Shown here in pieces: positions 1,067 to 48,387 of a stretch of DNA of 52,450 nucleotides. Origin of the DNA: Macrostomum lignano (taxonomy: Eukaryota); contig NIVC01004266.1 in NCBI GenBank assembly GCA_002269645.1, forward strand, positions 1 through 52,450. The letters are read 5' to 3'. Within the stretch, counting starts at the first letter, position 1; every line of letters starts with the position of its first letter. The notes beneath the pieces were generated by a model. It was not told where the DNA came from, made no database searches, and saw only the letters and a program-made list of their open reading frames with translations. Both the position numbers and the translations under genes were made by a program.

Positions 1067-2364
<1,298 letters not shown>

Positions 2365-6200: not shown

Positions 6201-9200
6201 GAGTACCTGCAGATCGCCTGCACGCACTATTTTGGCAGCTCGTCAGGAATGAAGAAACGCGGCTATCCTAGCGAAGTGCTGGACAAGGTGACTCTTATTG
6301 ACGATCTGGGCCATCTTTGGATCCACCAATCTCCAATAATCCCACTCTGGAAATCCAAAGATCCCGCATATTCCCAATAATCCCCCTCTGGAAATTCCAA
6401 GATCTCATCCATCTCCAATAAGCCGACTCTATAAGTCACAATATCCCGTATACGAGCTATTCCCAATAATCCAACTGGAAATCCCAATCTCCCATTCATC
6501 TTCAATAATCACACTCTGGCAATCACAATATCCCATTCATCTCCAATAATCCCACTCTGGAAATCTCAAGATCCCGTATATTCTCAATAATATCACTCTG
6601 GTAATCCTAAGATCCCGTATATTCTCAATAATCCCACTCTGAAAATCCCAAGATCGTGTCTATTCTCAATAATCCCACTCTGGAAATCCCAAGACCCCAC
6701 TCATCTCCAATAATCTCACTCTGAAAAGCCCAATATCCCGTCTATTCCCAATAATCCCACTCTAGAAATTCTAATATCCCATTTTCCCATCACTAAGAGC
6801 GCCATGCATCCCACGCTTCCCCACTCCCACCGCAGGTGACTGAATTCCTTCGCGAGGCGTTCCGCCGCTTCGGCGCTCCCATGGACGGTCCGGAAGCCGC
6901 TGAACGCGTTGTTGGCCGCCTGCTCCGCTCGGCGCTGCACTGCTCCCGGGACATCCAGGACAGCATGCTGGGCCTGCTGACTGAGCACTACCCCATGGCC
7001 CGCCTGCCGCAGGCCGGCCCGGCCAGTCTGGACCGCCTGCTGCCGCTGCTGCTCCGCCGGTGCCATTCGCCGGACGCCGAGCAGTTCCACGGAGCCGGCC
7101 GTGTGCTCGCCTACCTGCTGGCCAATTCCGCCGTGCATGTCGGCGGCGCCGAGCCGCTGCGCTACTGCCTGGACGCGGTGGCGGCCGCCCTGGCCAAAGC
7201 CAAGGCCGAGCCTGCCGCGGCGGCCTCCGAGTGCACCGGCCACGGCTACCTGCTGGCGGCCGGCCTCTACCTCAGCCGGGGTGGCGGCGAGGTCAACCGA
7301 GGACCGGATGTGCAACGGCAGCTGTTTAACGAGGCCACCGCGCTGTGCTTCGACTTGATCGCCTCGCTGATGTCCGTCATGGGCTTCCGAGGCGGCGGCG
7401 GCGAAGGCGGAGGCGAAGTCGCAGATTGGTCAGCCGATGCGGCGCCATCGTTCGAGGAGCTCGGGCGGGCGATTGAGAAGGCGGCCGGGGTAAGTGGTGC
7501 TTAACCATGCCATTCGTTTGGTTCTCAAAATCCCAATAGCCCATAATCCTCGATTCTGAAATCCTAATAACCCATAATCCTCGATTCTGAAATCCCAATA
7601 ACCCATAATCCACGATTGTGAAATCTCATAAATTTAGATAAAAATCCTACGAACTCAAGCCCTATTATCTCAGGCGCCCCCACGCAATCACCCCCGCCAA
7701 CCGCCATCAGGTGGACGCCGATCTGGACGAGGACCTGCTGTCCGGCGCCCGGCTGTCGCCCCACTACCAGCGCATCCTGGCCTGGGCCTGGCGCAACCTG
7801 GCCATGGCTGCCGACCTGCTGGTCCAGCTGTGCGCCGCCCACCTGCGCGCCGCCGATGCCGACATCGACTTGGACGGCGTGCGCCGCGTCGGCCGCCGGC
7901 TGGCCGCCGTGGTGACGGGCAGTCGGCACCGCGGCACCATCGAGGCGGTGGCCAACTCGCTGCGCGAATTCTGCCAGCTGATCCGGTGGCGACAGGAGCT
8001 GGCCGACCTGCCAGGCGAGCTGGTCAACGCGCCGCTGGTTGCTATGGAAACGGCAAGCTATTCGGTAACCAGGCGAAGCGCCGGCCTGCCGCTGCTACTG
8101 ACCTCCGTGCTGTCGGCCGTGTGCGCCGGCCAGTGGTCGGAGCCGCTGCTGGACCGGACGGTGGCCCGGCTGCTGCGCTGCGTTGAGTCGGCCACGGCCG
8201 ATAAGGCGACTGCGGAGGACGAGGCCAAAGGCAGCGATAAGGTGGGCCTCTCAAAGGTTCTGCCCACGCAGCTTTGTTTAAATTGGCTCCAAGCATTACT
8301 GACGCCAAGAAACGCCCCCAATCCATCAGAGAATCCCCCAACCCATCAGAGAATCGCCCAATCCTTCAGAGAATCGCCCAAATCCACCAGAAAATCCCCC
8401 AATCCATCAGAGAATCTCCCTATCCTTTAGAGAATCGCGACAATCCATCAGAGAATCGCCCCAATCCATCAGAGAATCGCCCCAATCCATCAGAGAATCG
8501 CCCCAATCCATCAGAGAATCGCCCCAATCCATCAGAGAATCGCCCCAATCCATCAGAGAATCGCCCTATCCATCAGAAGAATCGGCCCAAAAGCCTTTGC
8601 AAGAGCACTCGAGAATGGAAGGTCTGCATTGCTGTTTCTCCAGCTGTCTCCATTCCCTCACTCGCCGTCTCCCAGGTGGACAGCCCGAAGGTGCACGCCC
8701 TGAACCTGCTGCGTGCAGTGGTTCGCGAAGCGGCCCTGTACAATGCCACCACGCGGCACCACGAGGCCATCACCCGGGCCACCCTGACCAACTTCTCCGA
8801 CCGCTCCTGGGCGGTGCGCAACGCCTGCGTCCAGCTGCTTGGCGCGCTGTCCCAGCGGATGCTGGGCGTCGGCCGGCCGCACATCACGCCGACTGAGTTC
8901 TTCTCGGCTTATCCTCGGTTGCAGCGCTGCTTCCTGGAGGTGCTGGTGCGCGGCGCCAATCCCAGCAGCGCCAAGTTCATCGCCCACCAGGCCACGGTGC
9001 CTGTGCTGTCTTTCCTGTCGCAGCTATCGCCGGATCCTCCGACCGCCCTGCTGGACAATGTCGAGCCGTTCCGGCAGCCCCTGGTGACGCTGCTGTCCAG
9101 TCCGGTGTACGCCATCCGCCTCATGGCCGCCAAGTCCCTGGTGTCGTTCGCTCCGCCCAAAGTGCGGCTGGACCTGCTCAGCGCCCAGGTGCGACTTCTG

Positions 9201-12200
9201 GGGATGTACTTGAAGTAGTGGGTTTGGGATTATAGAGATTCAAAGAGTACAGTAAAATACAACTTTAGTGTGACAAGAAATACTTTGAGTGTGATCTACC
9301 TTTAGTACAGATACTTTAATATCTGAGCTTTTAGATGATTGGCTAATATTGGAGATGCATGGCTGAGATTGGAGATACTTGACTGAGAGTAGAGATACTT
9401 GGCTAAGATCAGAGATACTTGGCTGAGATTGGGGATGCTTGGCTGAGATTAGATTTCGTATAGTACGGTTGAGACTGGAGATACTTGGCTGAGATTTGAG
9501 ATGCTTGTGGTTGAGATTAGAGATATCTTGCCGAGATCGGAGATACTTGGCTGAGATTTGAGATGCTTATGGTTGAGATTAGAGATATCTTGCCGAGATC
9601 GGAGTTACTTGGCTGAGATAGGAGATACTTAGCTGAGATAGGAGATACTTAGCTGAGATAGGAGATACTTAGCTGAGATAGGAGATACTTAGCTAAGATT
9701 AGAGATAATAAAGGTAGAGATTAGTCTACTGCCACTAGGCACTTAGTACACGGAGGCAGCCCCGCCCCCAACTCCCCGCAGGTGCACAATCTCTCCAGCC
9801 TGCACCGCAGCGCCAACTCGCTGCACGGTCACATCCTGCTATGTCAGCGACTGGCCCTCGGCCTCTCCGGTCACCAGGACCTGTCGGTCATCCTGTCCGT
9901 CATTGTCGACCTCCTGCTTGTGCTCATCACCTTTAAGAGCTGGTTCCTAGCTCGCGAGAGTCTCCGACTGCTCCGCCTCCTGATGAAGCGCCACGACCCC
10001 GGCGTCAGCCTCAACCTGCCAAACAGCCTGGCGCCGACTGGGAAAGCGGCTCCGCCCGACATCTTCTTCGACATGTTCGACCAGGAGCTCACCGAGCTGT
10101 CCATGGAGCACCCCAACATCTTCGAGAATGTCCGCTGGGACCCCGGCTACCTGTTCAAGTCGCTGGCCGCCAGCTCCGAGGAGACCACTCAGCACTTCCT
10201 CACCCAGCAGGACCAGCTGAAGGAGCAGCGGATGAAGCTGGCTCTGTCTGGCCGGCGCGGGGTCACCGAGGACATGCCGAAGGCCGTCTGCTCGCCGCAG
10301 GACCTCATCGACTATGCGATTGGGCAGCCGCCTGAGCAGTGTCTCACCAGCAACCTGGCCGTCAGGGTGCTGGCTATGCTGGTCACCTATAATCAGGGAT
10401 TCTTCGCTACCGGGTATCTCAAGGCAAGCATCCGGAAATAAAAAATTCAGATTTATTCTAGTTCAAGTCACAGTCTGCTGTCTGAGACTCACCATCTCAA
10501 AGCCGAGAATCCCAATCCACAAGTGGAGAATCCCAATCGTGAGTAGAGAATCCTGGGAGCACCCAGCTGGCACAGATCACACCCAGCTGGCACAGATCAC
10601 ACCCAGCTGGCACAGATCACACCCAGCTAGCACAGATCACATCCAGCTGGCACAGATCACACCCAGCTGGCACAGATCACACCCAGCTGGCACAGATCAC
10701 ACCCAGCTGGCACAGATCACACCCAGCTGGCACAGATCACACCCAGCTGGCACAGATCACACCCAGCTGGCACAGATCACACCCAGCTGGCACAGATCAC
10801 ACCCAGCTGGCACAGATCACACCCAGCTGGCATAGATCACACCCAGCTGGCACAGATCACACCCAGCTGGCACAGATCACATCCAGCTGGCACAGATCAC
10901 ATCCAGCTGGCAAAGATCACACCCAGCTGGCACAGATCACACCCAGTTGGCATTCTGTATCTCCGCTTCAGCGTCTGCCTGGCGCAGCTCACCAGCTGAC
11001 CTTGCAGTGACCTCTAGCGGTCGAAAGAATGCTAAACTAGCTGGGGCTTCGCTGCCCTGCTAAGCACAAATCGTTGGTCAATTGGCTGTGTTTGGTTCCA
11101 ATTGGCCTGGTGTTGCTTTGTACATTGCTCTCTGTTTCATTAACAAAACTTATGGCAATATGGTGTCCATTTCTTTTTCATCGTGTCAAATTTCCCGAAG
11201 TTTTGTCGGGTTGGAGATAAACCAACGTTAAAGATAAAAATACAGTTCTTGACCTGCATAGGGATTTTTGACTTGGGATTTCAGCTTCGCCATTAAATTA
11301 TTGACTTTGAGGTGGGGTTCTTCATTCTGAGATGAGATTCTTAACTCTGAGATGGGATTATTGACTCTGAGATGAGATTCTTAAATCTAAGATGAGATTC
11401 TTGACTCTGAGATGAGATTCTTGACTCTGAGATGAGATTCTTAACTCTGAGATGAGATTCTTGACTCTGAGATGAGATTTTTCACTCTAAGATGAGATTC
11501 TCGACTCTGAGATAAGATTCTTGACTGTGAAATGAGATTCTTGACTCTGAGATAAGATTCTTAACACTGAGATGAGATTCATGACTCTGAGATAAGATTC
11601 TTGACTGTGAGATGAGATTCTTGACTTTGAGATGAGATTCTTGACTCTGAGATAAGATTCTTAACACTGAGATGAGATTCATGACTCTGAGATAAGATTC
11701 TTGACTGTGAGATGAGATTCTTGACTGTGAGATGAGATTCTTGACTCTGAGATAAGATTCTTAACACTGAGATGAGATTCATGACTCTGAGATGGGATTC
11801 TTGGCTTTTAGAAAGTATTCATAAATCTGTATTTATCGGGATTCCCTGTTTGTGGATATGAATGCCTCAACCTTACCAGCTGGCATCTTGTCTTCAACAA
11901 CAGGAGTACCTGGCCTTCATCAGCGACCAGCTTCGTCAGCTGCCGTCCGACTGCCCGAGCGAGCGGTTCTCGTCGCTGATCCTGCTGCAGAGCCACCTGG
12001 TGAACACGCTGTTCGACAAGGCCGCTTGCCAGGACCTCCTGGCCTACCTGAACCGCTTCTCCGACTACTCGATCAGCGAGGACCTCCGCCTGTCGGCCGC
12101 CAACGCGCTGCTGATTCTGGTGAGCGGCCGGCTGTGGGCGCAGAGCCGGGCCCAGACTGAGGACGAGCGAGTCCGCGAGATCCTGTTCCGCATGCTGTTT

Positions 12201-14652
12201 GACGAGTCCACGGCTGTGCGGGTGCTGGCCTGCTCCATTGTGTACCGCTGCGGCTGGCTGCCCGCCCTGTCCCACCACCGCATCTCCGGCCTGGCGCTCA
12301 CGCATCCCATTGTGGCCAGGCCGGCTGGCGCTAAGGAGCTGGACGCCGGCACCGACTGCGACTGGCTGGTGCGCACTCTGGCCGGCCTGGTGCAGCGGAT
12401 GTCCACCGCCTGCCGGCTGCGTCTGCGCGAGTGCCATCAGCAGACCATGTACCAGCGGGAGGAGGCCAATATCTTTGTGGAATGGCGCTACCTCATTGAG
12501 CTGTGCTTCTACAAGCTGTATCTGTCCGCTCCCGTGAGTTTTTTGTGCTCACTGTCTGAGAATGCCAGTTTTTTTTATGTACCACAACTTCTATTCAGAA
12601 TTTCCCAGGGATTTCTGTCCTGAGTCCGAGAGTCCCGATCCCGCTGATCCCGAGTATATCTAGCTGGCACAGATCACACCCAGCTGGCACAGATCACACC
12701 CAGCTGGCACAGATCACACCCAGCTGGCACAGATCACACCCAGCTGGCACAGATCACATCCAGCTGGCGCAGATCACATCCAACCGGCGCAGATCACATC
12801 CAACCGGCGCAGATCACACACAGCTAGCAAAGATCACACCCAGTTGGCACAGATGATGCCAGATCACACCCAGCCGGCACAGATCACACACAGCTGGCAC
12901 AGATCACACCCAGCTGGCACAGATGATGCCAGATCACACCCAGCTGGCACAGATGATGCCAGATCACACCCAGCTGGCACAGATCACACCCAGCTGGCAC
13001 AGATGATGCCAGATCACACCCAGCTGGCATAGATCACACCCAGCTGGCGCAGATCACATCCAACCGGCGCAGATCACATCCAACCGGCACAGATCACACC
13101 CAGCTGGCAAAGATCACACCCAGCTGGCACAGATCACACCCAGCTGGCACAGATCACACCCAGCTGGCACAGATTACACACAGCTGGCATAGATCACACC
13201 CAGCTGGCAAAGATTACACACAGCTGACATAGATCACACCCAGCTGGCAAAGATCACACCCAGCTGGTACAGATCACACCCAGCTGGCACAGATCACATC
13301 CAGCTGGCACAGATCACACCCAGCTGGCACAGATCACATCCAGCTGGCACAGATCACACCCAGCTGGCACAGATCACACCCAGCTGGCACAGATCACACC
13401 CAGCTGGCACAGATTACACACAGCTGGCATAGATCACACTCAGCTAGTACAGATCACACCCAGCTGGCACAGATCACACCCAGCCGGCATTCTGTATCTC
13501 CGCTTCAGCGTCTGCCTGGCGCAGCTCACCAGCTGGCCTTGCAGTGACCTCTAGCGGTCGAAAGAATGCTAAACTAGCTGGGGCTTCGCTGCCCTGCTAA
13601 GCACAAATCGTTGGTCAATTGGCTGTGTTTGGTTCCAATTGGCCTGGTGTTGCTTTGTTCATTTTCATTAGTTTGATTGATATGTGCTTACGGACATAAT
13701 AACATATATGCATCGGGCATTCTGTATCTCCGCCCCTGTGTCCAGCTGCTGAAACTGCACCAAGTGACCTTTTGGCGGTCGAACGAATGCCAGATTAACA
13801 AAGCCTCGCATGGCTTGGCTGTGCGCAAATCGTTGGTCGAATTAGGGCTACCCGCCTAATAGCCGTTCGACCTGGTGTTGCATTGCACACTTGCTGGTGT
13901 AGAAAATAGCCATTGAATTCATTTCTATTTGCTACTTGCTGCTCAGTAGCATGTAAAGAATTTTGTAGCCATTTTTACTGAATGAGTGTTACGAGTGGCA
14001 TTTATTAATTTCTCGTGAGCTTTCTCCCATTAAGGCCTCAGACTTTTAAACTTCTATAGACTGAGCAGTTCTTCTGTAGGGGTTGTGGCCTAGTGGTTAG
14101 GAGCGTCAGACTCACGACTGGAAGGTCGAGGGTTCGATTCTCGATCCACTCGGAACAATTTGTGTCCTTGAGCAATAAATACTCTGCATTGCTTCAATCC
14201 ACCCAGCTGTAGAATGGGTGCCAGCATTAGCTGAGGTAATTGAGGGTTGAATTGAGGACCCCCCAGTCCTTGGACTGAACAGCCGTACGCAGCCTTCAGA
14301 TGCGCCGCGCAATAGCTGCGGCTGAGCTGTCGGTTGCTGTGCTTTTATCAATTATTAAACTATTATTATTGTATAATAAGCTACTGGAAGTAGTTTATGC
14401 GCACATCTGATGTCCTCCCAAACTCTTTCATCCAACACCCAGACGCTGGACAAGCAGGAGCGGGCCCGCATCGGCGAGTCCCTGGCCGACATTCGGGTGC
14501 AGCTGGCCAACGCCTCGGCCAGGGGCGACAGCGCCGAGGCTGCCTGGCCGAGCAGCCTGGTGGACTCGGCAGTGATGGAGCACTCGGCTCCGTTTCATGC
14601 CATGCTGTACGCTGGCCGGCTGTGCGACCTGCTGATTGGCCAGCTTTGCTAA
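3251..14652 (+). CDS. THADA: THADA / Trm732 homolog (tRNA 2'-O-methylation cofactor, DUF2428 armadillo-like), 11 exons, ~1660 aa
   Basis: Phase-consistent model: 3251..3292, 3840..3971, 4078..4180, 4665..5596, 5685..6287, 6836..7489, 7711..8241, 8676..9188, 9782..10423 (GC donor), 11904..12533, 14443..14652. THADA motifs: AWAWRNL, SRHRGTIE, VTRRSAGLP, VHALNLLRAVVRE, WAVRN, TEFFSAYPRL, NSLHGHILL. Confidence 0.9.
3460..3770. repeat. 44-bp minisatellite (CCATAGACTAACCAACTGATAGCCAGAGTTCCTGGTATTTTCAG) in THADA intron 1
   Basis: Tandem units visible. Confidence 0.9.
4226..4340 (+). repeat. Dispersed ~115-bp element, copy A (THADA intron 3)
   Basis: Shares GTACAGTATTGGCGCGCT and GCTCAGGAGTCTGCGGAAYGGGCAGA with copy B, and CTGTACAC(T)CCTGTGTGAG plus GCGCGCTTGTGTGC with copy C. 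Confidence 0.8.
4393..4637. repeat. (AGTC)n microsatellite, THADA intron 3
   Basis: Directly visible. Confidence 0.95.
6320..6790. repeat. Degenerate ~40-bp minisatellite (AATAATCCCACTCTGGAAATCCCAAGATCCC core), THADA intron 5
   Basis: Visible repeated core. Confidence 0.85.
7525..7625. repeat. 30-bp tandem repeat (AAATCCCAATAACCCATAATCCTCGATTCT), THADA intron 6
   Basis: About three visible units. Confidence 0.8.
8305..8585. repeat. 21-bp minisatellite (GAGAATCGCCCCAATCCATCA), THADA intron 7
   Basis: Visible; produces the spurious NPSENRP peptide repeats. Confidence 0.9.
9345..9710. repeat. 20-bp minisatellite (GAGATACTTGGCTGAGATTG), THADA intron 8
   Basis: Visible tandem units. Confidence 0.9.
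10561..10950. repeat. 20-bp minisatellite (CCCAGCTGGCACAGATCACA), THADA intron 9
   Basis: Visible; the last unit runs into snoRNA copy 1. Confidence 0.95.
10949..11127 (+). ncRNA. SNORA8: Box H/ACA snoRNA, SNORA8/ACA8-like, copy 1
   Basis: Hairpin 1 GGCATTC/GAATGCT with upper stem CCGCT/AGCGG; H box AAACTA 11034..11039; hairpin 2 GGTCAATTGG/CCAATTGGCC; ACA at 11122..11124, 14 nt from the pocket. Pockets GTATCT+TCG and ATCGTT+TGGT complement conserved 18S CGA-U-C-AGAUAC and ACCA-U-A-AACGAU. Confidence 0.8.
11325..11805. repeat. 20-bp minisatellite (GAGATTCTTGACTCTGAGAT), THADA intron 9
   Basis: Visible tandem units. Confidence 0.95.
12660..13487. repeat. 20-bp minisatellite (CCCAGCTGGCACAGATCACA), second array, THADA intron 10
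   Basis: Same unit as 10561..10950; runs into snoRNA copy 2. Confidence 0.95.
13486..13664 (+). ncRNA. SNORA8: SNORA8-like H/ACA snoRNA copy 2, ACA box mutated to TCA (possible pseudogene)
   Basis: Near-identical to copy 1, but TCA at 13659..13661 where copy 1 has ACA. Confidence 0.65.
13716..13892 (+). ncRNA. SNORA8: SNORA8-like H/ACA snoRNA copy 3 (diverged, intact boxes)
   Basis: Stems changed compensatorily (CCGCC/GGCGG; GGTCGAA/TTCGACC) while both pockets are unchanged; H box AGATTA 13792..13797; ACA 13887..13889, 14 nt from the pocket. Confidence 0.82.
14079..14372 (+). mobile_element. tRNA-derived SINE in THADA intron 10
   Basis: A box TGGCCTAGTGG 14086..14096; B box GGTTCGATTC 14131..14140; tRNA cloverleaf imperfect; followed by a GTGTCCTTGAGCAA...TCCACCCAGCTGTAGAATGGGT central domain of the kind seen in V/Deu/Meta-type SINEs; (TTA)-rich tail. 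Confidence 0.8.
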
Positions 14653-19856: not shown

Positions 19857-20966
19857 ATGCTTGTGGAGTACGAGAACAGTGACTCGGAGTCCGAGTCAGA
19901 CGCTGAACAGCAGCAGCAGAAACAGGAGGAGAAGAAATCTTCAGCCAGGCAGGCGGCAGAGGAGCCGGCAGGCACTGACACTGAGGAGGCGCCCGTCATT
20001 TCCGATGACGAAGCCGAAACAGTCCAGAACGATGCGGAGCGCCAGCAGGAGGCGGCGGGCGGCGGCGTCGAGGCAGCCGATGGCCTGGCCGCGATGGCAG
20101 CCGCGGACGACACTGTGGAGGAGAATCTGCGAATGCGCGTTCCCGCGTCCGCCCAGGCGCCAGCGACATCCGGGTCGGGGACTTCGGCGGAGCCAGCAGC
20201 CGCGGCGGCCGAATCGCTGGCTCAGCAGAAGCAGCAAAGACAGAAGCAACAGCAGCTGCTGCTGCAGCAAAAGCGCCGCCGACTTCTCCTGTTGGAACCG
20301 AGCGCTGCCGCCAACGGCGCTGACGAGGACGACGATGAAGACGACGAGGACGCGGTCAAGCGTCGCCGGATCGCGTCGGCCGCCGCCGCCGGCCAGATGC
20401 GCGGCGCCACGTCACTGCTGGCGCAGCTGCCCAAGCCCAAGGCGCTGGCCGTCCGCGAGGGCGCCGGGCGCGTCTTCGTGCCGCCGATGCGGCCGACAAT
20501 CCGGCCACCGAGTCCGCCGGCGCCGAAGCTGCCAGCGGCGACATCTTCGATGGTGGATGACGAAGCGCCGTTTGCCGCGGAGCCTGCCGACTCCAACCTG
20601 CCGCAGCAGCAGAGCCTTCTTGGCGCCGTCCTGCCGCCCAGCGAGCTGCACCGCTACCGCCAGGCCACCGGCGCCTCGCTCACCGCCGACGTCGCCGCTG
20701 ACGCTGGCAGCGGCGGGATCATCGACATCCGACAGTCTGACCAGGTGGCCGGCGCCGAGCTCGAGCTGACGAAACAGTTAACTCGCAACGCCGGCGCCGA
20801 TGCAAGGCGCAAGCCGGAAGGCCCCGAGCCCAGCTCGATGGCGAAGCGGAAGCACCAGATCACCTACCTGGCCTATCAGGCCAAGGAGCGCGAGCTGGAG
20901 CTGAAAAACTCCTGGTCTGACGCGCGCTTCAATCAGCGGAGCAGTCAGAGGAAGTACGGCTTCTGA
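19857..20966 (+). CDS. PRCC: Proline-rich protein PRCC homolog, single coding exon, 369 aa
   Basis: N-terminal MLVEYENSDSESE and C-terminal KRKHQITYLAYQAKERELELKNSW...RKYGF* are the conserved PRCC termini. Confidence 0.93.
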   Translation: MLVEYENSDSESESDAEQQQQKQEEKKSSARQAAEEPAGTDTEEAPVISDDEAETVQNDAERQQEAAGGGVEAADGLAAMAAADDTVEENLRMRVPASAQAPATSGSGTSAEPAAAAAESLAQQKQQRQKQQQLLLQQKRRRLLLLEPSAAANGADEDDDEDDEDAVKRRRIASAAAAGQMRGATSLLAQLPKPKALAVREGAGRVFVPPMRPTIRPPSPPAPKLPAATSSMVDDEAPFAAEPADSNLPQQQSLLGAVLPPSELHRYRQATGASLTADVAADAGSGGIIDIRQSDQVAGAELELTKQLTRNAGADARRKPEGPEPSSMAKRKHQITYLAYQAKERELELKNSWSDARFNQRSSQRKYGF

Positions 20967-22188: not shown

Positions 22189-22964
22189 ATGAAGGCGCTC
22201 CAGTCGGACAACCGGCAGCGCAACCTCATGTTCCACCTGGCCCTGCTGTTCTGCTGCGTTGCCATGGTAACCTATTTCTTAGCTTTCGTATCGCCGCACT
22301 GGCTGGAGTCGCAGCCGGAGTATCACAGCCAGTTCCTGCGCATCGGCCTGTGGGAGGTCTGCTTTGACGGCTACCTGCACCCCACAGACTACGTGTCCAA
22401 GGCCTACTTCGGCTGCTGGTACATCTACTTCCCGGAGTTCTCCCGCATCAGCGGCTGGCTCATCCCGCCCTGGTACTACGCTGTGCAGATGCTGGGCATT
22501 GTGGCCTTCATCTCCATCCTGCTGTCCACTATCGCCATGGGCTCGCAGTTTGTCCGCGTGCTGAATCGCGACTCAAAGCGTTGGCTGCGTGCCAACACGA
22601 TTTTCCACCTGCTAGCCGGCGCCTGCATCGCCTTCCAGCTCATTGTGATGGCCATCCAGAGCCGCGACCGCCGCTGGATGCCGCGGCCCGACCAGAACCG
22701 GCTGGGGTTCGCCTACGCCATGGCGCTCATCGCCTGCCTGGCCTGCACCTTCACCGTCGGCTTCCTTGCCATGATGTACATCAAGGAGGACGAGGAGCAG
22801 CTCGTCTTCAGCGACGTCACCGACGCCGGCCCTGACATCGGCGCGGCGGCCGCGTCCCAGCCGATGGGCGGCTACGGCGGCGCTAGCGGTCAGGACAAAT
22901 TTATGGAGGCCGGCGGCGGTCGATATTTTGTCGGCGGCGGCGGGCAAGCGACAGCGCCGTTTGA
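22189..22964 (+). CDS. Invertebrate claudin (PMP22/claudin superfamily, Megatrachea/pickel-like); probable true stop 22962..22964 after a 1-nt frameshift
   Basis: Four hydrophobic segments; W..., GLWEVC...C claudin signature in loop 1 (SPHWLES...IGLWEVCFDGY...GCWY). The ORF track end (23103) reads into a 33-bp repeat; the shifted frame ends ASDSAV*. Confidence 0.8.
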
Positions 22965-22969
22965 GCTTT

Positions 22970-23100
22970 TGGGACTCGGACTCTGTTGTTGGGACTTGAA
23001 TTGGGACTCGGGATTCAGTTGTTGGGACTTGAATTGGGACTCGGGATTCAGTTGTTGGGACTTGAATTGGGACTCGGGATCCTGTTGTTGGGACTTATAT
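22970..23100. repeat. 33-bp tandem repeat (GGGACTCGGGATTCAGTTGTTGGGACTTGAATT)
   Basis: Three to four visible units. Confidence 0.85.
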
Positions 23101-24916
23101 TAACCCTGGCGTTGTAGGAAGGAGATTTTAACAAGTTGACTTGTTTAAGTCTGCTTGTGACTCTTGTGCTTATCTAGTGTAACCATGCTGCTCTCCTTCG
23201 CCTCATCATTCCCTCTTGCTTATTCACTACTAAAAATTTGTTTTTTCGTAAACGCACATCATGCTACTTTTGTTAAAAGTAGTAGCCTAAACAGACAATA
23301 TTGCTTAAAAATTCGAAAAACTTTTCAAACTAATAGGCTTTTGGCTGTATTTGTAAATATCTGTTTTACAAAGTTTCTAACAGGGAGTTGTGTAATTTTG
23401 TGTACGTTGTAACTGCTAAATTTATACCAATCTGGGCTGTTCAGGCTGTGCCATCAGCACCCGGCTTTAACATTCCATCTACCAGTAACTGAAAAATCTG
23501 TACTGTGTTACTATAATTATATTACCTAAATAATAATACCTGGAGCAATTTATAATCCTGATCGCTTAGTAATAATATCAAATAATAAATTGTGCGATTT
23601 TAATTAAACTAACGATTTTAAAATTTTATTGCTTTGAGTAAATAAGAGAGAGACAGACAATGCAAGTTCATGCCATAGTATATACCAATGCAGTTATTAT
23701 TAGTGAATTAATGGTCGGCTTATGCATATATTTAGCAGAACTTTTATCAATCGCCGCCCAATATGAACAGGTAAGACTTTTATTAAACTGGAAAATAGAA
23801 AATCAGGGCTTGCTATATCGGTTTCAGTAATGCGTTATCAATAAGCAAAGAAAAAACTCTCTGTTGGGATTGCTGCTGCTTACTGCTAGTAGTGAGGGAC
23901 GCGTGTGTCTCGAGCGCATCTTGTTGGCTTCTGGCATGCCAACCTGATGCAGCCCGAGTCCAGCGTCCCGCTTATTTATATATTCATACTCGAATTGGCA
24001 GAAGGAAAGTCTTTAGCGGCATATTAATTATATAAAATACATGGCTGCTCAAAACAAGACAATATTCCTATGTACGCGCAGGCTAATTAGCATAGGTAAT
24101 TAGTTAGCAGTGTCCAAACCTAGCCAATGCAAAACGGAAAGACGTGCGACTTTCATTTTCACACCTGGACTGTGCATGCGGCGGGGGGATAAGGGGAGCA
24201 TTTTTATACACGCGATAAGCCGTCCGCACAGTCTAGCGACTATTGGCTGACAAGGGATTATTTATTGTACGCAGATTAGCAGATTAGCAAGCAAGAGAAA
24301 AAATACGAGAAACAGTTTTTGTTATAACAATGCGAAAATACTTTTTTATAGTTTGACCAGAAACACAGAAAGAGAAGATGCTGGCTATGATTATGGTTAT
24401 GAATGCAGTCGCAAGTTGAACTAGATTGCTTATTGGAGCAGCAGCGCAAGCAGAAACTGAAGCCGCTAGGAACAGTTGGATTAATGTCAAGTTTATCAAC
24501 GCAGAATTGGGAAACAAGATCAGCAAGGAATCAATTTTAATTTGGCTGCTAATTAATGGCAAAGTGCGTGAAACCTCAGATGCCAAAGCAACAACCAGTT
24601 TACATCGTAGTAGATGGGTGCAAATGGGTTTTTGAAAAAGGTTTTTAGTTAATACTTTTAACAATTTTCTATGCAAAATTTAGCTATAATTGCCTCTCCA
24701 AGAAACAGCATCGGGCGAATGCGGGAGCCTGGATCGCGTCTGATGAGGTGGTGAATGTGCTCTGCGCTCGAATTCTGTCACTATGCAGTTAATCTCCGAA
24801 GGCCAATCGATATTTAAATGACTTTTTGCTTAACTAAATTTCAAACGCCAGGCTTTAGCACGCGCCTCTCAAATGGGCTGGAGTATCTGTTAATGGATTT
24901 TTGAGTCGCAAAAGCC

Positions 24917-26116
24917 CTAGCACCAGTAAGCGCCCTCATCATCCGGGGCCTCGACTGTACGTGCCAACATCGTCATGGCCGCCGGTCGACCGGAGGCTAC
25001 ATAGAACGGGTACCGCTGCTGCTGCTGCTGCTGCTGCTGTTGATGTCTGCGCGGCGGCGGCGGTGGCGGCGCCAACGGCATCGGGAAGTTCGCCGGATGC
25101 GGCTGCGGCGGCGGCAGACCGGCTGCGGAGGGCTGCGACGATCGCAAGGCCGCTCCGCTGAGACAGCTTTGATGACGGCTTGAGTTGTTGAAGGACGGAG
25201 GGTAGGCGGGGTGCCGCTCGGCGGCCGGCTGATATCCACGGGACGGCGGCGCCGGGTGCCGATAGGGCTGCGACTGCCGATGGTACATCTGCGGCTGCTG
25301 CACCGACCGCCTCGCCCGCGGCATCATGGGCGGTGACATGTCGTCGTAGTCACCCGCTTCGACCATTGAAGCGTCGATGACCAGGCGTAGGTCGGCGTCG
25401 GAAGCTATCGACTCTTCAACCATCAGGTCCTCGTCCGGTTCGAGCTGGTCGACCTCCGCGTCGAGCTCCTCGTCAACAAGTGACCCGGAAATGCCGCCCA
25501 TCTCGTACTCCTCCATGACGACGTCGAACTCGTTGAGATCGTCTAGAAGCTGTTCGGGTGGCGGACTGGGCACCCGGTCCAACCTCCGAGTCGGCGACTC
25601 TGTCGTCGTCGGTGGTGCAGCTGCCCAAACTGCGTCGGCGAGGACAGCGACGGCGTCGGCGACATTGACGGCGGTGTTGGTGGTCGAGACGGTGACGCGT
25701 TCAGCCGAGGAAAGTTGATGCCAGACGGCGAACAAAATCCGTGCCGGCCGCCGGTGGCGCCAGCGACGCCAGTTTGAACCGTCGGCGACGGCAGGACGTG
25801 CGGCATCCGGTCGTGGTCGTCTGGCAGGCGCAGGTTCAAGCTGCTTGGTGGTGGAGGCTTCCTCGCTGCCGCTGCCGCTGCGAGCTGTTGTTGATGCTGC
25901 TGCTGCTGCTGCTGCTGAAGGTACTGAGGATGCTGAAAGGTTTGCGCTGGGCGCGACTGCTGCTGCAGCGTCGGCACCGGCTGCGACAGCGGGGGCGGCG
26001 AGTTCGACGGCGAGGGCGTTTTCGAACGCGACTCCAGCGAAGTGGCACGCATCGCCTGAGACAGCTCTGGCCGCGGTGCCGATAGGGACTGGGACTGCTG
26101 CTGCTTTTGCGGCTGC

Positions 26117-26154
<38 letters not shown>

Positions 26155-29100
26155 TTGTTGAAACTGCAGCTGTTGTTGTTGCTGCTTCTGCTGTTGTTGC
26201 TGTTGATACTTCAGTTGTTGTTGTTGTTGTTGTTGTTGTTGCTGCTGCTGCTGCTGCTGCGGGTTGAGCGGTTGCTGGCGCGCAGTGGAGCCGCTTCGAG
26301 GCGGCATCTGGCGGCCGGACTGCTGATGATGATTTTGGTAGCTGCTGGTCACCGAGTCGTCGGACCGCTGACCGCGACCTAAGGGGTGCCGCGGCAGGTG
26401 GAAATATACAGTTAGAATTCGTGTTGCCAAGGAGCTTATAACCCGGTCTCGCGATGCAGGCCCAGTTTAAGGAAGCCAATTGGCTAAAACAAGCTTGTGC
26501 GCATCGCAAAACCAGCTGCAGTGACCTCGTGCCGTATTGCGAGAGGCGGCAGCTGGCGCAGAGCGTCAATAACTAATAATAGTGCATGGAAACCAAAATC
26601 TGCTGGTGAAAGTGCCTCTACAGCCACCGGTGCTTCCGTGTCTGAGCGGTGCCTCTGAATAAAATTTCTGGTACACCAACGCATCCTTGAGGGGCCGGAT
26701 TCCCGTGGAAATGAGCAAAATTAGAAATCTGACCGTCACCAATATAAGGAATTTATTCCCCGATATCCAAAAGTAGACAAAGGAGCAATGAGCAATTTTG
26801 GCTAGTTCTTACGGCTGAATTTTGAGCACATGTATGGAAACTGATGTCGGGGCAGATGGACGATGAGCCAAGCAGCATATTTCAGTCTGCAGAACGGCCA
26901 AGACAGAAAATACGGTGCACGACAGTTTAAAATTGTAAATGCTAAACTACTCATTCATAATCATATTGCGAGCGTAAATCTACATTTCTACGCTTATGCG
27001 AGACAACATCGATGTTGAAAAGTAAAACAAAGATCTAAGCGCCTTGTGGCGTACGCAGGGATTTTAATTGGACCCTAACCTAAATGGCGCCAGTATTCGG
27101 GGTCCTGGTTGGCGCCCCTGTCCTCTGGGCCGGTGGATGCCAAGTCCAAGTGGTGGTAAAGTTCGAACTATGCTGCCTCTTATTTGGAGTTTGAAGGAGC
27201 CCCCGGCCACCTCTGCCCCCTCTGCCCCCTCTGCCCCCTCCGCCCCCCTCTGCGTATGCCACACTGCTGGGCGCTGCTACTCGGTGCTACTGCCAGCCCT
27301 GCAAGATTCTTGGCATATTTTACACCTTAAGGGCTTCGCTGCAGCTGATCAGCAAAACAAGTATCTAAACGGACGTGACGGGACGAAAGCACGCGTGAAA
27401 AACCGGTGCATCAAAACAAAATTGAGGAAATTCTATGAGACATCGAATGCTCTCAGTAATGCCGTTGTCTGTGCAGTATTATCATTTATTTTCAGAGGGC
27501 AGACCCTTAAAATTTAACTGGAAATTTCAATCTTGCAATTCCACGGAGTGAAGCATCACTCAACTCCGAGGAGGTACCCCTGAAATACAAGGTCAAAAGT
27601 GGGCTGTTGTTTAGCGGAATGTTTGCGACAACCTCAATCTGAGACCCTATCAGCGGTGAGTAAAACAAATAGGTTAAAAAGAAGATTCACAATATTTAAT
27701 TTATTACTTTACACAATGTTATTAATTATGATAGAAACGATGCGGTCGCTTCTTCAAGCAAAAGATCATGTATAACATCATGTACTCGAAATAACACCAA
27801 CACAGACTGGGGCGGGAAGAGACGTGGACTGCAAAGCGTTAAGCGGAAAGTCAGACAAACAGCTAATGACGCAGGTCACATGTTCATCAATGCAAATGCT
27901 ATAGATTAATACGCGGCAGTAACTGAGACTCTCTTGACTGACAATAACAGGCATGGCTCATGCAAATAGTTTTTCATGAGTAGTATGAACCGCGTTTTAT
28001 GTGGAGTAGTACTGGCGGCAGGAATCTTGAATAGTTTTAAACCAATTTACAAAAGGCAGCATTGGAGTATACTATTATAATGCACTAATAAACTAAAGCC
28101 AATATAGTTGTCTAGAGCTTGTCACTGTTGTCTAGAGCTTGTCTCTGTTGTCTAGAGCTTATCTCTGTTGTCTAGAGCTTGTCTCTGTTGTCTAGAGCTT
28201 ATCTCTGTTGTCTAAAGCTTGTCACTGTTGTCTAGAGCTTGTCACTGTTGTCTAAAACTTGTCTCTGTTTTCTAGAGCTCGTCTCTGTTGTCTAAAACTT
28301 GTCTCTGTTGTCTAGAGCTTGTATCTGTTGTCTAGAGCTTGTCTCTGTTGTCTAGAGTTTGTCAATGCTGACTAGAGATATCTACTAGAACTTTTCGATG
28401 TTTATAAAGATTGTGGCTCATAGTCTTGCTGTCTATCAATATGCGTCCAACGACTTTTCTTGCGGGGGGTGATTGGTGCCATGGTGGCTTAGCGAACGAA
28501 GGGGTTCAAACTCGAGTTCAGACTCAACCTTATAAGGACTCAGGCGACCAACTCACCAAAATAGCGCTCCCGCCGCTCCCTCTCGGCCAGCTGGTGGGCC
28601 TGGTCAATCATGCTCGACACCGCCTGCGCGAACCCACCTGCTGCAGCGGCTCCGAACGGACTCGAGGCCATGCCCGGCCCCGGGTAGCCGGCGGGCGCCT
28701 GGTGCTGACGATACGGTTGATGATGATAATGAGGCGACGGAGATGTCGGACGCGACGGGGTCGGGCTTGAGTCGAGATAGTTGCGCAGGTTGCCGTGCTT
28801 GTACTGTTGAACGGCGAGCGGTTTCAGGATATGAAAAGCAGGGTTACAGAGATGTGAACTGACGAGCAAAGCATCGAGTAAACCCTTAAAACCATTTGCC
28901 GGAGAAAGGGGTTCGCGGGGAAACTTCAGTTTGTATAAAATCCTATTGCGGGAAGTCTGTGACTTTCTGGCGCTGTGAATTTGATCGGAAAGCTGGGTCT
29001 GAGCAACTGAGACCGTCACCAAATTCAAGAAATGCAAAGAAGCGGCTGGGCGGCTTGTGTTGAAGGAAACTTGGCTCCTGTAAAAAATTTCCCGAACCTG

Positions 29101-32100: not shown

Positions 32101-35100
32101 ACCCGATGGATAATTTGCTACAGGTAACAATTTGCAAAAAAGTCTGAGCTAAAATTGAAAAAAACATGAACTGTCATTCTTCACTGTGAAGTGCGCAAAC
32201 CAATTCAATAATACTTTTGCTGCAGCAATACATTTTAGAAAATAACCAATCAAATCTTCAGTGCTTAATTTTTTTCTTAACGGATAACCTTTAGGGTGAC
32301 GTAATGCGGTTTATTATCAAGGACCAGCGGTTCTGCAGTGCGTTGCCTAAGCTGGAACTGTTAGCGGAAAATCTGATTAACTTAGTTCGCATGTTTAATG
32401 TGCAGCGCGGGTGCCACGCATAAAAAGGGCTCATTGCGCCGGTGTTTTTTATATGCCATTTTGTTTTAGTGCGTGGCTGGTTGTGTGAGTTTAAACAAAG
32501 TTATTTTATGATCAACTGAAAACAAAATTACGATGCTGATCTTTCGCATAGACAAAAAAGTATATGGTGTTAACAGAATTTCATGGAATTTTTGTGCTCG
32601 CTTTAGATAATTTATAACTGCCGTAGCTGGTTCGCTCGCATGGCTACTCCAAATTCCATCTGATTACTAAAAAACATTGATTGAGAACTCTTTCTAAAAA
32701 TTTCTATAAATTTTATGAGAACTATACAGCCTGACTGAAATTAAAATTTTCTAAATAATCTTAATTTAAATAGAAACAGAAAATGACGTATAATTAAAAC
32801 AAAGTAACGAAACAAACAATGACACCACTTGTTATCAACAAAGGTAAGGAATTCATAAATTGAAATGCGCTGTGGATTCCAGTGTTCGAATAAAAGCATC
32901 AGTTCATAACAACTCTGCTGTCGGTGAGTGATGCAGATCTGACTGGTCTCATAATAATGAAAAGGAGTAAAACTGCCTGCACAGAAATTACAAAATACCT
33001 CGTCATTGCTAGTGCGTGAAGCTGTTGGCGATGCCAGAACACCTTTAGTTGGTTTTACCTGGCGACGATGGCGTTCAGAAAGATCGAGTATTGGATATTG
33101 ATTTGGCTCACCAGCAACTCTCTGAGAGACTATACTTAAAGAAAGTTCCATTTTTGCTGTTCACAATTAAGTAACAGCAAAATTCTACTTGTAAATTGGA
33201 AATACTTGACACTGTTCTTTCGGAAGCTAAAAGGGTTTAACAAATTTAAAACAAAAAAGTGTCTGCGATTTGGAGCATCGGGCACTCACCCCTGCGCCTT
33301 GTTTCTCCTTGCTGCTCGACTTGAAAGCCCGCCAGTTTTCCAGGATCAGCAGGCCAGCGTAGACTTTGCCGACCGTCATTTTGAACTCGCACAGCTCTGG
33401 AAAGATTGGAAGATCGTCTACGTTGCTTGCTACGCTTGTAGTTCAAACCAAAGATGCTAGAATAACTGGATGGGCCACTCAGCACATTTGCATGCAAGCT
33501 ACTTTCAGTTCAGTATACACTGAAGCATTTTAATGTATTTTTAAAGACAAGGCTCTTTACCCCCCCCCCAAGCAAAAACCCCCAAACTCCACGCCGAACC
33601 TCTACCCCTGCCCCGCCCCAGCCTTAATCTGCCATGTACATTTCAGTGACTAGCGTACATTACGGATGAACCAATTACAAGCTGTTTACGTCTACAATTA
33701 GAGTAACGCAAACACGCACAGCAAAACTTAAACTATGAATCATGTTACTATATGATACCGTAAGCAACGAATAACGACCCTAGAAAGGTATCTATTATAT
33801 CTATTAAATTTCCTAAAATTCTATTCAACTGTCACGGGGTAAAATTCCTAAGAATTGACCCCATCACCCATCAAAATGACCCTGTTCACGTGAAAATTTC
33901 CTATAAATACAAGCCAAAATCCGAGCTGAAGTCTCAAGCTCAGCAGCCTCAGGAAAACTTGAGACCAATCAAGAACTACTCCCAAACCGAGGGTACATCT
34001 CTGGGAGAAGTGTATACCGAACGGTAAGCCTTTGTTGAAACCCTTGTTATTTGATTACTGAGAGCTGAGTCATTGCCAGCCGTTATCGATCAGTTGATTT
34101 CTGTTGAATTATTCAATTAAAAGTCTCCTTATTCCTAGGGGATTGGATAAGATCCATTTGGACCAGCTTTGATCGGTTTCTGCTTTGCACCATTTCTTCG
34201 AGAGAGAATTCGTTCAGTTACAAGAATAGGTAGCAACAGAGTGCTTAATGTGTGCTTGGAATTGCTATTCGTGTGGGTTTCGTACTATCCATGAGGACAT
34301 GCAAAACTTTAACGCACCTTCGTCGGGCGGCACGAGCTTGTTGAGGCATTTCTTTGCCCGCAGCGGCCACATCTTCTGGATGCTCACGCGCAGCTCCTCG
34401 TCCTTTTTGTCCATTAGTTCGACCGCGTCCACCTTGATGCTCAGCGACTCGCGGATGAGCGCGAACAGGGTGGTGGTGAAGTGCACGGTGTTGTTCTCGT
34501 CCACTGGCATGTTCATGCGGATCAGCTTCCGGTAGGCCAGGCGGTAGGGGCACTTCTTGCCGAACCCGACGGGCGGCTCCATGTTGCGGAGCATGTCGTA
34601 CATCTCCGAAAAGTGGATTCGCCCCGTCGCACCGGGGTCGAACTCGGCCCACACTCTACTATACTCGTCCAGATGATGCGGGCCCAAAATTGAGGAGTCC
34701 CTGGTCAAGTAGTCGAAGTTGTCCATGATGACGGCCACGAACAGGTTGAGCATGAGAAATGTGCAAAAGAAGATAAAGGAAACAAAGTAGATGTAGGAGA
34801 TGTTGTTGCCGCAGGTGCTGCCCGTTTCATCGCTAGGTGTGTATGGATTATCCTTCGTGGATGGCGGAGGCTGGCAGTCCTTGCCAGCGGAGCAGGCCAG
34901 CATGATGGTCTGCCAGGACTCGCCAGTGGCGCAGCGGAACAGCAGCACGAGGCTCTTGAGAAACGTCTGGAAATTGTTGTGCCTGTTGATGTCGCTCTCA
35001 TTGTCCAGCTTGATGTTGCCGAACACCTGCATGCCGATGATGGCGTAGATGAAGAACAGCATGATGATGAGCAGGCAGACGTACGGCAGGGCTTTGATGG

Positions 35101-47499: not shown

Positions 47500-47559
47500 C
47501 TGCGAAATGTTTCAAGCGTACCATTTGTAAGATCTTTCATTCATAAAAAAGCTGGTATA

Positions 47560-48083: not shown

Positions 48084-48387
<304 letters not shown>

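What the first reader, a model, noticed from the sequence alone, without database searches (positions are those of the whole stretch)
10949..13892. Three hidden SNORA8/ACA8-like H/ACA snoRNAs hosted in THADA introns
Seen: three copies of a ~178-nt element with hairpin-H box-hairpin-ACA layout. Copy 3 has changed stems with compensatory pairs, but both antisense pockets are invariant, which indicates selection on RNA structure. The pockets complement two conserved 18S uridines 25 nt apart (GACGA-U-CAGAUAC and GACCA-U-AAACGAU). Known: these are human 18S Psi1056 and Psi1081, guided by SNORA8 (hosted in TAF1D); yeast snR31 guides the first (Psi999). Inference: the guide has moved into a different host, itself an RNA-modification gene (tRNA Nm32 cofactor), and is longer than typical H/ACA RNAs.
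Basis: partly seen in the sequence, partly recalled or inferred. Interest (0 to 1): 0.75.

Follow-up and report, generated by a model that had tools for sequence, protein, structure and literature searches.

The report
Intronic H/ACA snoRNAs in flatworm THADA
Two intact copies and one box-mutated copy of an unannotated ~178-nt H/ACA guide RNA lie in the last two introns of the Macrostomum lignano THADA gene, and they are predicted to direct the two conserved 18S rRNA pseudouridines that match human Psi1056 and Psi1081; this is a sound but ordinary annotation find.

Summary
Three + strand copies exist: 10949-11127, 13486-13664 and 13716-13892. There are no others in the 52-kb window. Copies 1 and 2 are a recent duplicate (98.9% identical, duplicated together with a 20-bp satellite). 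Copy 3 is old (67% identical).

Between copies 1 and 3 the four pocket strands are 27/28 identical, against 54/82 for the other comparable segments. All 29 stem pairs are kept, six of them through changes on both sides. H boxes (AAACUA/AGAUUA) and ACA boxes sit 13-14 nt from the pocket tops.

Against a validated human 18S sequence, the best target of pocket 1 is U1056 (3+6 bp) and of pocket 2 is U1081 (4+6 bp). Both are known pseudouridines. The host is THADA/Trm732 of Macrostomum lignano.

- Copy 2 has UCA instead of ACA and is probably dead.
- Complementarity is shorter than claimed.
- No Rfam family, SNORA8 and snR31 included, matches even at E<=10.
- Papers tie ACA8 to the Psi1056 site and a 28S site, not to Psi1081.

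An extra covarying mini-hairpin follows the H box.

Verdict: genuine H/ACA snoRNA genes, a new member of a known kind. Expression, the worm's own 18S sequence and genome-wide copy number could not be tested.

The parts
10949..11127 (+). Copy 1, an intact H/ACA snoRNA gene of 179 nt. 5' hairpin: P1 10949-10955/11027-11033; pocket strands 10956-10962 (UGUAUCU) and 11021-11026 (UCGAAA); P2 10963-10967/11016-11020. H box AAACUA 11034-11039. Mini-hairpin 11043-11047/11054-11058. 3' hairpin: P1 11062-11066/11114-11118; pocket strands 11067-11075 (CAAAUCGUU) and 11108-11113 (UGGUGU); P2 11076-11082/11101-11107. ACA 11122-11124.
13486..13664 (+). Copy 2, a recent duplicate of copy 1 with 2 substitutions in 178 nt. 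The ACA box is mutated to UCA at 13659-13661; the H box is at 13571-13576. It is probably a non-accumulating pseudogene.
13716..13892 (+). Copy 3, an intact and diverged paralogue of 177 nt. P1 13716-13722/13785-13791; pocket strands 13723-13729 and 13779-13784 (UCGAAC); P2 13730-13734/13774-13778. H box AGAUUA 13792-13797. Mini-hairpin 13801-13805/13812-13816. 3' hairpin: P1 13821-13825/13879-13883; pocket strands 13826-13834 and 13873-13878; P2 13835-13841/13866-13872. ACA 13887-13889.
11904..12533 (+). Penultimate THADA coding exon (210 codons, phase 0/0; acceptor AG at 11902-11903, donor GTGAGT at 12534-12539). It separates the intron holding copy 1 from the intron holding copies 2 and 3.
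   Evidence: read directly from the sequence
14443..14652 (+). Putative last THADA coding exon (acceptor AG at 14441-14442, in phase, stop TAA). The last intron 12534-14442 therefore holds copy 2 and copy 3.
   Evidence: inferred from reading frame and splice sites, with no transcript evidence and no Pfam hit
7711..9218 (+). THADA exons that identify the host gene and the species. They match Pfam DUF2428 (THADA/TRM732) and TPR_Trm732_C. The stretch 7711-8265 is 99% identical to Macrostomum lignano UniRef A0A1I8HAI4.
10400..10948 (.). 20-bp satellite (CACCCAGCTGGCACAGATCA)n that abuts the 5' end of copy 1. The block 10560-11126 is duplicated at 13097-13663 (94.9% identity).
12658..13485 (.). 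The same 20-bp satellite, abutting the 5' end of copy 2.

Best explanation
These are intron-encoded box H/ACA small nucleolar RNA genes of the flatworm Macrostomum lignano.

How they are made (inferred from established H/ACA biology): the RNAs are transcribed as part of the THADA pre-mRNA, from its last two introns on the sense strand. They are bound co-transcriptionally by the dyskerin/Nop10/Nhp2/Gar1 proteins and released by exonucleolytic trimming of the spliced intron, down to the base of the 5' hairpin and to 3 nt past the ACA box.

How they work: each hairpin has an internal loop (pocket) whose two strands pair with 18S pre-rRNA on either side of one uridine.
- The 5' pocket (UGUAUCU / UCGAA) presents the U of CGA-U-C-AGAUAC, the equivalent of human Psi1056 and yeast Psi999.
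- The 3' pocket (CAAAUCGUU / UGGUGU) presents the U of ACCA-U-A-AACGAU, the equivalent of human Psi1081.
Dyskerin then isomerises each uridine to pseudouridine.

Status of the copies: copy 1 and copy 3 are functional paralogues kept by selection. Copy 2 is a recent duplicate that lost the ACA box and probably does not accumulate. A small covarying hairpin between the H box and the 3' hairpin, together with long hairpin tips, accounts for the 177-179 nt length.

Shown here: the sequence architecture, the covariation, the pocket conservation, the box spacing, the target match and the host gene. Inferred: expression, processing, protein binding and the actual pseudouridylation.
For: Architecture and boxes:
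- Hairpin-hinge-hairpin-tail folds are recovered for the single copies (z-scores -1.9 to -3.9) and for the alignment.
- ANANNA is kept through two substitutions (AAACUA to AGAUUA), and ACA is kept in copies 1 and 3.
- The distance from the upper stem to the H box is 13 nt and to ACA is 14 nt, which places the target U at the canonical 14-16 nt (counted).

Selection:
- Pocket strands are 27/28 identical, against 54/82 for the other comparable segments. The binomial p is about 1e-4, by my arithmetic.
- 29/29 stem pairs are kept, with 6 double and 5 single compensating changes. Slid-partner controls give 24-46% paired.
- Similarity between copies 1 and 3 starts at the first P1 base and stops about 3 nt after ACA.

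Targets:
- On it, the top hit of pocket 1 is U1056 (3+6 Watson-Crick pairs) and of pocket 2 is U1081 (4+6 Watson-Crick pairs).
- Shuffled pockets reach the same total at a known Psi in 1.3% and 2.0% of trials.
- Both sites are about 93-94% modified in human cells.

Context:
- The copies are on the sense strand inside THADA introns.
- They are not a dispersed repeat within this window.
Against: - There are no expression data, and no RNA ends are known.
- The M. lignano 18S sequence and its Psi map were not available. Target pairing was tested only on human 18S, although in a very conserved stretch.
- The 5' arm of the pocket 1 duplex is only 3 bp, the minimum usually accepted.
- No Rfam H/ACA family matches.
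- No orthologue from another species could be retrieved. The covariation therefore rests on one old duplication, in effect two independent sequences.
- The MFE folds partly close pocket 2 by pairing AUCG with UGGU.
- Genome-wide copy number is unknown.
- 28S, 5.8S and snRNA targets were not scanned.
Confidence: 0.8

Rival explanations
1. All three are silent or decaying copies (pseudogenes) of an H/ACA gene whose working copy lies elsewhere in the highly duplicated M. lignano genome. They carry the features only by descent.
For: Copy 2 has demonstrably lost its ACA box. The locus is full of satellites and segmental duplication. Genome-wide copy number could not be checked.
Against: Copies 1 and 3 are old paralogues: 67% identical, with hairpin tips that cannot be aligned. 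Yet they keep 27/28 pocket bases, both boxes and every stem pair through 11 compensating changes. That pattern requires selection on both lineages after they split.
Confidence: 0.1
2. It is a structured intronic repeat with no guide function, for example a satellite-associated hairpin element or a splicing-regulatory structure. On this reading the complementarity to 18S is coincidental.
For: Short bipartite matches are common. 14-15% of shuffled pockets find some U in 18S at the same total. No Rfam family recognises the element.
Against: Both pockets independently pick known Psi sites; the joint chance is about 3e-4. The ANANNA and ACA boxes sit at the canonical distances. The single-stranded pocket bases are the most conserved part, the opposite of what a purely structural element would show.
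Confidence: 0.05
3. It is a genuine H/ACA RNA, but its real targets are elsewhere: 28S or 5.8S rRNA, snRNAs (a scaRNA), or it is an orphan.
For: Only 18S was scanned. Pocket 1 pairs with just 3+6 bp. The AA after UCG in the 3' strand of pocket 1 is conserved but unpaired in the U1056 model.
Against: The best all-Watson-Crick matches in 18S are precisely two known Psi sites. No CAB box (UGAG) is present in any apical loop; I read this directly from the sequences.
Confidence: 0.05

Closest known systems
Human SNORA8 (ACA8), hosted in TAF1D/JOSD3
   Same: It is a box H/ACA guide and is listed as the human counterpart of snR31, that is, the guide of 18S Psi1056 (PMC2780460). This is the same uridine that the 5' pocket selects here. 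It is also intron-encoded.
   Different: The Rfam SNORA8 model does not match, even at E<=10. The host gene differs (THADA against TAF1D). In the chicken survey ACA8's other listed target is a 28S site shared with E2, whereas the second pocket here selects 18S U1081. The element here is about 40 nt longer and has an extra mini-hairpin after the H box.
Yeast snR31, N. crassa ACA5 and Arabidopsis snoR5
   Same: These guide the equivalent 18S uridine (yeast Psi999, N. crassa Psi996). N. crassa ACA5 is 187 nt, a length similar to this element.
   Different: The fungal genes are independently transcribed (marked IR), not intronic. In N. crassa the site is guided by the ACA-proximal hairpin, whereas here it is the H-proximal one. 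No sequence or covariance-model similarity was detected.
Generic metazoan intronic box H/ACA snoRNAs
   Same: They share the hairpin-H-hairpin-ACA design, the bipartite pocket, the 14-16 nt spacing rule and the sense orientation in a host-gene intron. Antisense elements of 3+6 to 4+6 nt fall within the range tabulated for chicken guides.
   Different: There is a third small hairpin in the hinge. Two copies lie in one intron, one of them defective. The copies sit 550-780 nt from the 3' splice site. The host gene is not a ribosome or translation gene.

Membership tests
box H/ACA snoRNA (class) | Two hairpins, each with an internal loop, joined by a single-stranded hinge and followed by a short tail | tested here: met
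   This is seen in the single-sequence folds and in the RNAalifold consensus. 29/29 stem pairs are kept across the copies. There is an extra 5-bp hairpin in the hinge.
box H/ACA snoRNA (class) | H box ANANNA in the hinge | tested here: met
   AAACUA (11034-11039, 13571-13576) and AGAUUA (13792-13797) lie in the same alignment columns. Both fit ANANNA despite two substitutions.
box H/ACA snoRNA (class) | ACA box 3 nt from the mature 3' end | tested here: inconclusive
   ACA is present at 11122-11124 and 13887-13889. Similarity between the paralogues fades about 3 nt later, but the mature end is unknown. Copy 2 has UCA, so the feature is not met for that copy.
box H/ACA snoRNA (class) | Target uridine positioned 14-16 nt upstream of the H or ACA box | tested here: met
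   There are 13 nt between the upper stem and the H box, and 14 nt between the upper stem and ACA, in copies 1 and 3 (segment lengths).
box H/ACA snoRNA (class) | Bipartite pocket complementarity flanking a uridine that is actually pseudouridylated | tested here: met
   U1056 pairs with 3+6 bp and U1081 with 4+6 bp, all Watson-Crick, on validated human 18S. Both are mapped Psi sites. This was not tested on M. lignano 18S.
box H/ACA snoRNA (class) | Stable nucleolar RNA bound by dyskerin, Nop10, Nhp2 and Gar1 | not testable with these tools
   No expression or binding data were available. No paper on M. lignano snoRNAs was found.
SNORA8 / ACA8 family (Rfam) | Match to the family covariance model | tested here: not met
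   cmscan against all 4227 Rfam 15 families gave no H/ACA hit at gathering score. It also gave none at E<=10 on 196-nt slices of copy 3 and copy 1 or on the whole region.
SNORA8 / ACA8 family (Rfam) | Same pair of modification targets | tested here: inconclusive
   One target is shared (the Psi1056 equivalent). The papers I could reach give ACA8 a 28S site as its other target. I could not find which human snoRNA guides Psi1081.
SNORA8 / ACA8 family (Rfam) | Conserved host gene (TAF1D/JOSD3 cluster) | tested here: not met
   The host here is THADA/Trm732.
scaRNA (Cajal-body H/ACA) | CAB box (UGAG) in the apical loops | tested here: not met
   Direct reading of the apical segments found no UGAG in any of the four distinct hairpin tips.

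The most novel reading that the evidence does not exclude
The element is a flatworm-specific three-hairpin H/ACA RNA that combines, in one molecule, the guides for two neighbouring 18S pseudouridines that other lineages may serve with separate snoRNAs. Its covarying hinge hairpin would have a function of its own, such as a protein-binding or processing signal. Its residence in THADA would couple rRNA pseudouridylation to expression of a tRNA 2'-O-methylation cofactor.
Probability: 0.12. Interest if true: 0.45.

Novelty: new member of a known kind. Interest (0 to 1): 0.3.

Why it matters
Flatworm snoRNAs are essentially unannotated, and I found no paper describing them for Macrostomum. Rfam models miss this one entirely.

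The locus is a clean example of how paralogue comparison alone can expose an H/ACA guide: pockets invariant, stems covarying.

It predicts that the two central-domain 18S pseudouridines known from human cells, one of them also known in yeast, are conserved in Platyhelminthes.

It also gives M. lignano, a regeneration model that can be genetically manipulated, a concrete guide RNA to deplete. Beyond that, it is routine gene annotation rather than new biology.

Tried and rejected
- **Rfam.** A whole-window cmscan at gathering score and three permissive scans found no snoRNA family. The only hits were satellite-driven miRNA noise.
- **Orthologues via flanking exons.** A protein search with the exon between the copies and with the last exon found nothing. 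The DUF2428 exon found only M. lignano itself and one 921-bp Logan contig of a relative, L001, which holds no intron of interest.
- **Orthologues via DNA patterns.** Two scans of JGI metagenome contigs, with the 3' hairpin and the 5' hairpin signatures, gave 0 matches.
- **Human guide of Psi1081 and full ACA8 target list.** Several searches and look-ups were uninformative.
- **Dispersed repeat or transposon.** Rejected for this window: there are only three copies, I saw no terminal inverted repeats or poly(A) tail at the ends, and copy 2 arose by DNA-level duplication together with the satellite.
- **tRNA gene next to copy 3.** Rejected: ARAGORN finds none, and Rfam gives only a 11.7-bit tRNA-Sec hit.
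- **Longer pairing of the pocket 1 3' strand UCGAA with 18S UUCGA (1045-1049).** Considered and rejected, because it would leave 8 unpaired nucleotides around the target, which does not fit H/ACA geometry.
Full report
**Where the window comes from, and the host gene**

The + strand from about 4.7 kb to 14.65 kb carries GC-rich exons. They hit Pfam DUF2428 (THADA/TRM732, E=5e-25), TPR_Trm732_C (1e-20) and TPR_Trm732. The exon at 7711-8265 is 99% identical to a Macrostomum lignano UniRef protein (A0A1I8HAI4). Its only other relative is 72% identical, on a 921-bp Logan contig. The window is therefore M. lignano (a free-living flatworm) genomic DNA, and the host gene is its THADA orthologue. By established knowledge, THADA/Trm732 is the partner of Trm7/FTSJ1 for tRNA residue-32 2'-O-methylation.

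Reading frames and splice sites define two exons. The penultimate coding exon is 11904-12533: acceptor AG at 11902-11903, donor GTGAGT at 12534, phase 0 at both ends. A last exon is 14443-14652, in phase and ending in TAA. Copy 1 therefore lies in the penultimate intron. Copies 2 and 3 lie together in the last intron (12534-14442). All three are in the sense orientation. The donor of the penultimate intron is ambiguous (10367 or 10414). The last exon rests on frame and splice sites only, with no Pfam hit.

**The observation**

The three copies are real and sit exactly at the stated coordinates: 10949-11127, 13486-13664 and 13716-13892. blastn with word size 7 and nhmmer --max find no other copy in the 52 kb.

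Copies 1 and 2 differ at 2 of 178 positions. They belong to a block (10560-11126 matching 13097-13663, 94.9% identity) that also contains a 20-bp satellite, (CACCCAGCTGGCACAGATCA)n, abutting the 5' end of each. One of the two differences turns the ACA box of copy 2 into UCA (13659-13661).

Copy 3 lies 51 nt downstream of copy 2 and is an old paralogue. It is 67% identical over the alignable columns, and its hairpin tips have different lengths and cannot be aligned.

**Anatomy**

In copy 1 coordinates the element reads as follows.

| Feature | Sequence | Coordinates |
|---|---|---|
| 5' hairpin, P1 | GGCAUUC / GAAUGCU | 10949-10955 / 11027-11033 |
| 5' hairpin, pocket strands | UGUAUCU and UCGAAA | 10956-10962 and 11021-11026 |
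| 5' hairpin, P2 | CCGCU / AGCGG | 10963-10967 / 11016-11020 |
| 5' hairpin, tip | 48 nt | 10968-11015 |
| H box | AAACUA | 11034-11039 |
| Mini-hairpin (5 bp) | GGGGC-UUCGCU-GCCCU | 11043-11058 |
| 3' hairpin, P1 | AAGCA / UGCUU | 11062-11066 / 11114-11118 |
| 3' hairpin, pocket strands | CAAAUCGUU and UGGUGU | 11067-11075 and 11108-11113 |
| 3' hairpin, P2 | GGUCAAU(UGG) / (CCA)AUUGGCC | 11076-11082 / 11101-11107 |
| Spacer | UGU | 11119-11121 |
| ACA box | ACA | 11122-11124 |
| Tail | UUG | 11125-11127 |

The MFE folds of the halves and of the full elements reproduce this layout. Their z-scores are -1.9 to -3.9 against dinucleotide shuffles. RNAalifold does the same on an unguided MAFFT alignment.

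The 3' pocket strand plus P1 amounts to 13 nt before the H box and 14 nt before ACA. This puts the unpaired target uridine at the canonical 14-16 nt from each box.

**Evidence of selection on the RNA**

I compared copy 1 with copy 3 segment by segment.
- The four pocket strands are 7/7, 5/6, 9/9 and 6/6 identical, 27/28 in total.
- The single difference (A to C) is at the bottom of the 3' strand of pocket 1, outside the predicted duplex.
- All other equal-length segments together are 54/82 identical.
- With 60-66% background identity, 27/28 has a binomial probability of about 1e-5 to 1e-4 (my arithmetic).

I then counted pairs on a gap-free core alignment with the structure given explicitly (A3).
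- All 29 pairs of the five helices are standard pairs in all three copies.
- Six pairs changed on both sides: U-A to C-G in P2a; G-C to A-U and G-C to C-G in the mini-hairpin; A-U to U-A in P1b; A-U to G-C and U-A to A-U in P2b.
- Five pairs changed on one side through G-U. None is broken.
- When the 3' partners are slid by 1-3 columns, only 24-46% of cells pair, with 0-1 double changes.
- Only 2 of 500 column shuffles reach the observed values.

The H box changes at two positions yet stays ANANNA. Similarity between copies 1 and 3 begins at the first P1 base and ends about 3 nt after ACA. The unit under constraint therefore coincides with the predicted mature RNA.

One caveat applies. All of this rests on one ancient duplication, so there are in effect two independent sequences.

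**Targets**

Taoka et al. 2018 (PMC6182160) map human 18S Psi1056 in A-Psi-CAG (1055-1059, 93% modified) and Psi1081 in ACCA-Psi-AAACG (1077-1086, 94% modified).

It is 1869 nt long, as stated in that paper. ACCAUAAACG starts at 1077. All 43 published Psi positions fall on U.

I then scanned every U under H/ACA geometry. In this geometry the 3' pocket strand pairs with the bases 5' of the U, the U and the next base stay unpaired, and the 5' pocket strand pairs downstream.
- For pocket 1 the best hit is U1056, with 3+6 Watson-Crick pairs (UCG:CGA and GUAUCU:AGAUAC).
- For pocket 2 the best hit is U1081, with 4+6 Watson-Crick pairs (UGGU:ACCA and AUCGUU:AACGAU).
- The runners-up are shorter or rely on 2-5 G-U pairs, and none of them is a Psi site.
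- Shuffled pockets reach the same total at any known Psi in 1.3% and 2.0% of trials, so the joint coincidence is about 3e-4.

Antisense elements of 3+6 nt do occur in curated vertebrate H/ACA tables. From general knowledge of SSU rRNA, this stretch corresponds to the bacterial 790-loop region of helix 24 and the adjoining strand, one of the most conserved parts of the molecule. I could not check the M. lignano 18S itself.

**Comparison with known families**

Yeast snR31 guides 18S Psi999 (PMC5699541). The N. crassa survey lists snR31, Arabidopsis snoR5 and human ACA8 as homologues of its 187-nt guide for 18S Psi996 (PMC2780460). The chicken survey places ACA8 in the JOSD3 (=TAF1D) intron cluster, and it also lists 'E2/ACA8' as the mammalian guides of a 28S site (PMC2653536).

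The element therefore works like SNORA8/snR31 at its 5' pocket. I found no support for SNORA8 guiding Psi1081, and I could not find which human snoRNA does.

Membership in the SNORA8 or snR31 families is not demonstrated. Rfam 15 gives no hit at gathering thresholds over the window. It gives no H/ACA hit at E<=10 over the region or over 196-nt slices around copy 3 and copy 1. That is common for H/ACA RNAs across phyla, so it weakens 'is a SNORA8' but not 'is an H/ACA guide'. No CAB box is present, so a scaRNA reading is unlikely.

**What could not be done**

No orthologous locus could be fetched. Protein searches with the flanking exons returned nothing. Two pattern scans of metagenome contigs returned nothing. 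No literature on Macrostomum snoRNAs turned up. Expression, mature ends, genome-wide copy number, the species' own rRNA sequence and its Psi map all remain untested.

**Verdict**

The finding is a correct detection of unannotated box H/ACA snoRNA genes. Two are intact paralogues and one is a recently duplicated copy that lost its ACA box. They are predicted to guide two conserved 18S pseudouridines from the introns of flatworm THADA.

The mildly unusual features are the covarying hinge hairpin, two copies in one intron, the co-duplication with a satellite, and the combination of these two targets in a single RNA. None of these departs from the known kind. My confidence that copies 1 and 3 are functional H/ACA guides for these sites is about 0.8. 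Novelty: new member of a known kind. Interest: 0.3.

Noticed in passing
window 10400-10948 and 12658-13485: Long arrays of a 20-bp satellite (CACCCAGCTGGCACAGATCA) end exactly at the first bases (GGCA) of snoRNA copies 1 and 2. They were duplicated together with the copies (10560-11126 matches 13097-13663, 94.9%). The unit resembles the CACCAGCUG tip of the copy 1 5' hairpin. Whether the satellite derives from the snoRNA is untested.
   Followed up: partly
window 11290-11810: A second, unrelated 20-bp satellite (GAGATGAGATTCTTGACTCT) fills most of the rest of the intron downstream of copy 1. It produces spurious weak C/D-box and miRNA hits in permissive Rfam scans.
   Followed up: no
window 14078-14152: A degenerate tRNA-like sequence with an intact GGTTCGATTCTCG T-arm but no acceptor stem lies 190 nt downstream of copy 3 in the same intron. 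ARAGORN finds no tRNA. Rfam gives only a 26.6-bit hit to Plastid-ycf2 on the minus strand and a 11.7-bit hit to tRNA-Sec. It is single-copy in the window. It may be a tRNA pseudogene or the head of a SINE.
   Followed up: partly
window 11043-11058 and 13801-13816: A 5-bp hairpin lies between the H box and the 3' hairpin. It is kept in both old paralogues through two double compensating changes (GGGGC/GCCCU against AAGCC/GGCUU). It is not part of the canonical H/ACA design, and its function is unknown.
   Followed up: partly
window 1085-2364 (+): Exons of a tubulin-tyrosine-ligase-like (TTL family) gene lie upstream of THADA (Pfam TTL, E=2e-44 and 7e-23).
   Followed up: no
window 34265-47540 (-): Exons of a voltage-gated calcium channel alpha-1 subunit (Pfam Ion_trans, GPHH and Ca_chan_IQ), with several intronic minisatellites (for example 35328-35752, 38788-39105, 40300-40666 and 47919-48418).
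   Followed up: no
window 48991-52397 (+): A non-LTR retrotransposon: a Gag-like ORF, an endonuclease (Exo_endo_phos_2, E=1e-19) and the start of a reverse transcriptase (RVT_1), running off the end of the window.
   Followed up: partly
window 19857-20966 (+) and 22189-23103 (+): A PRCC-domain gene (E=1e-13) and a claudin/PMP22-family membrane protein gene (E=6e-14) lie between THADA and the calcium channel gene. A long Gln/Ala-rich ORF lies on the minus strand at 24917-26569.
   Followed up: no
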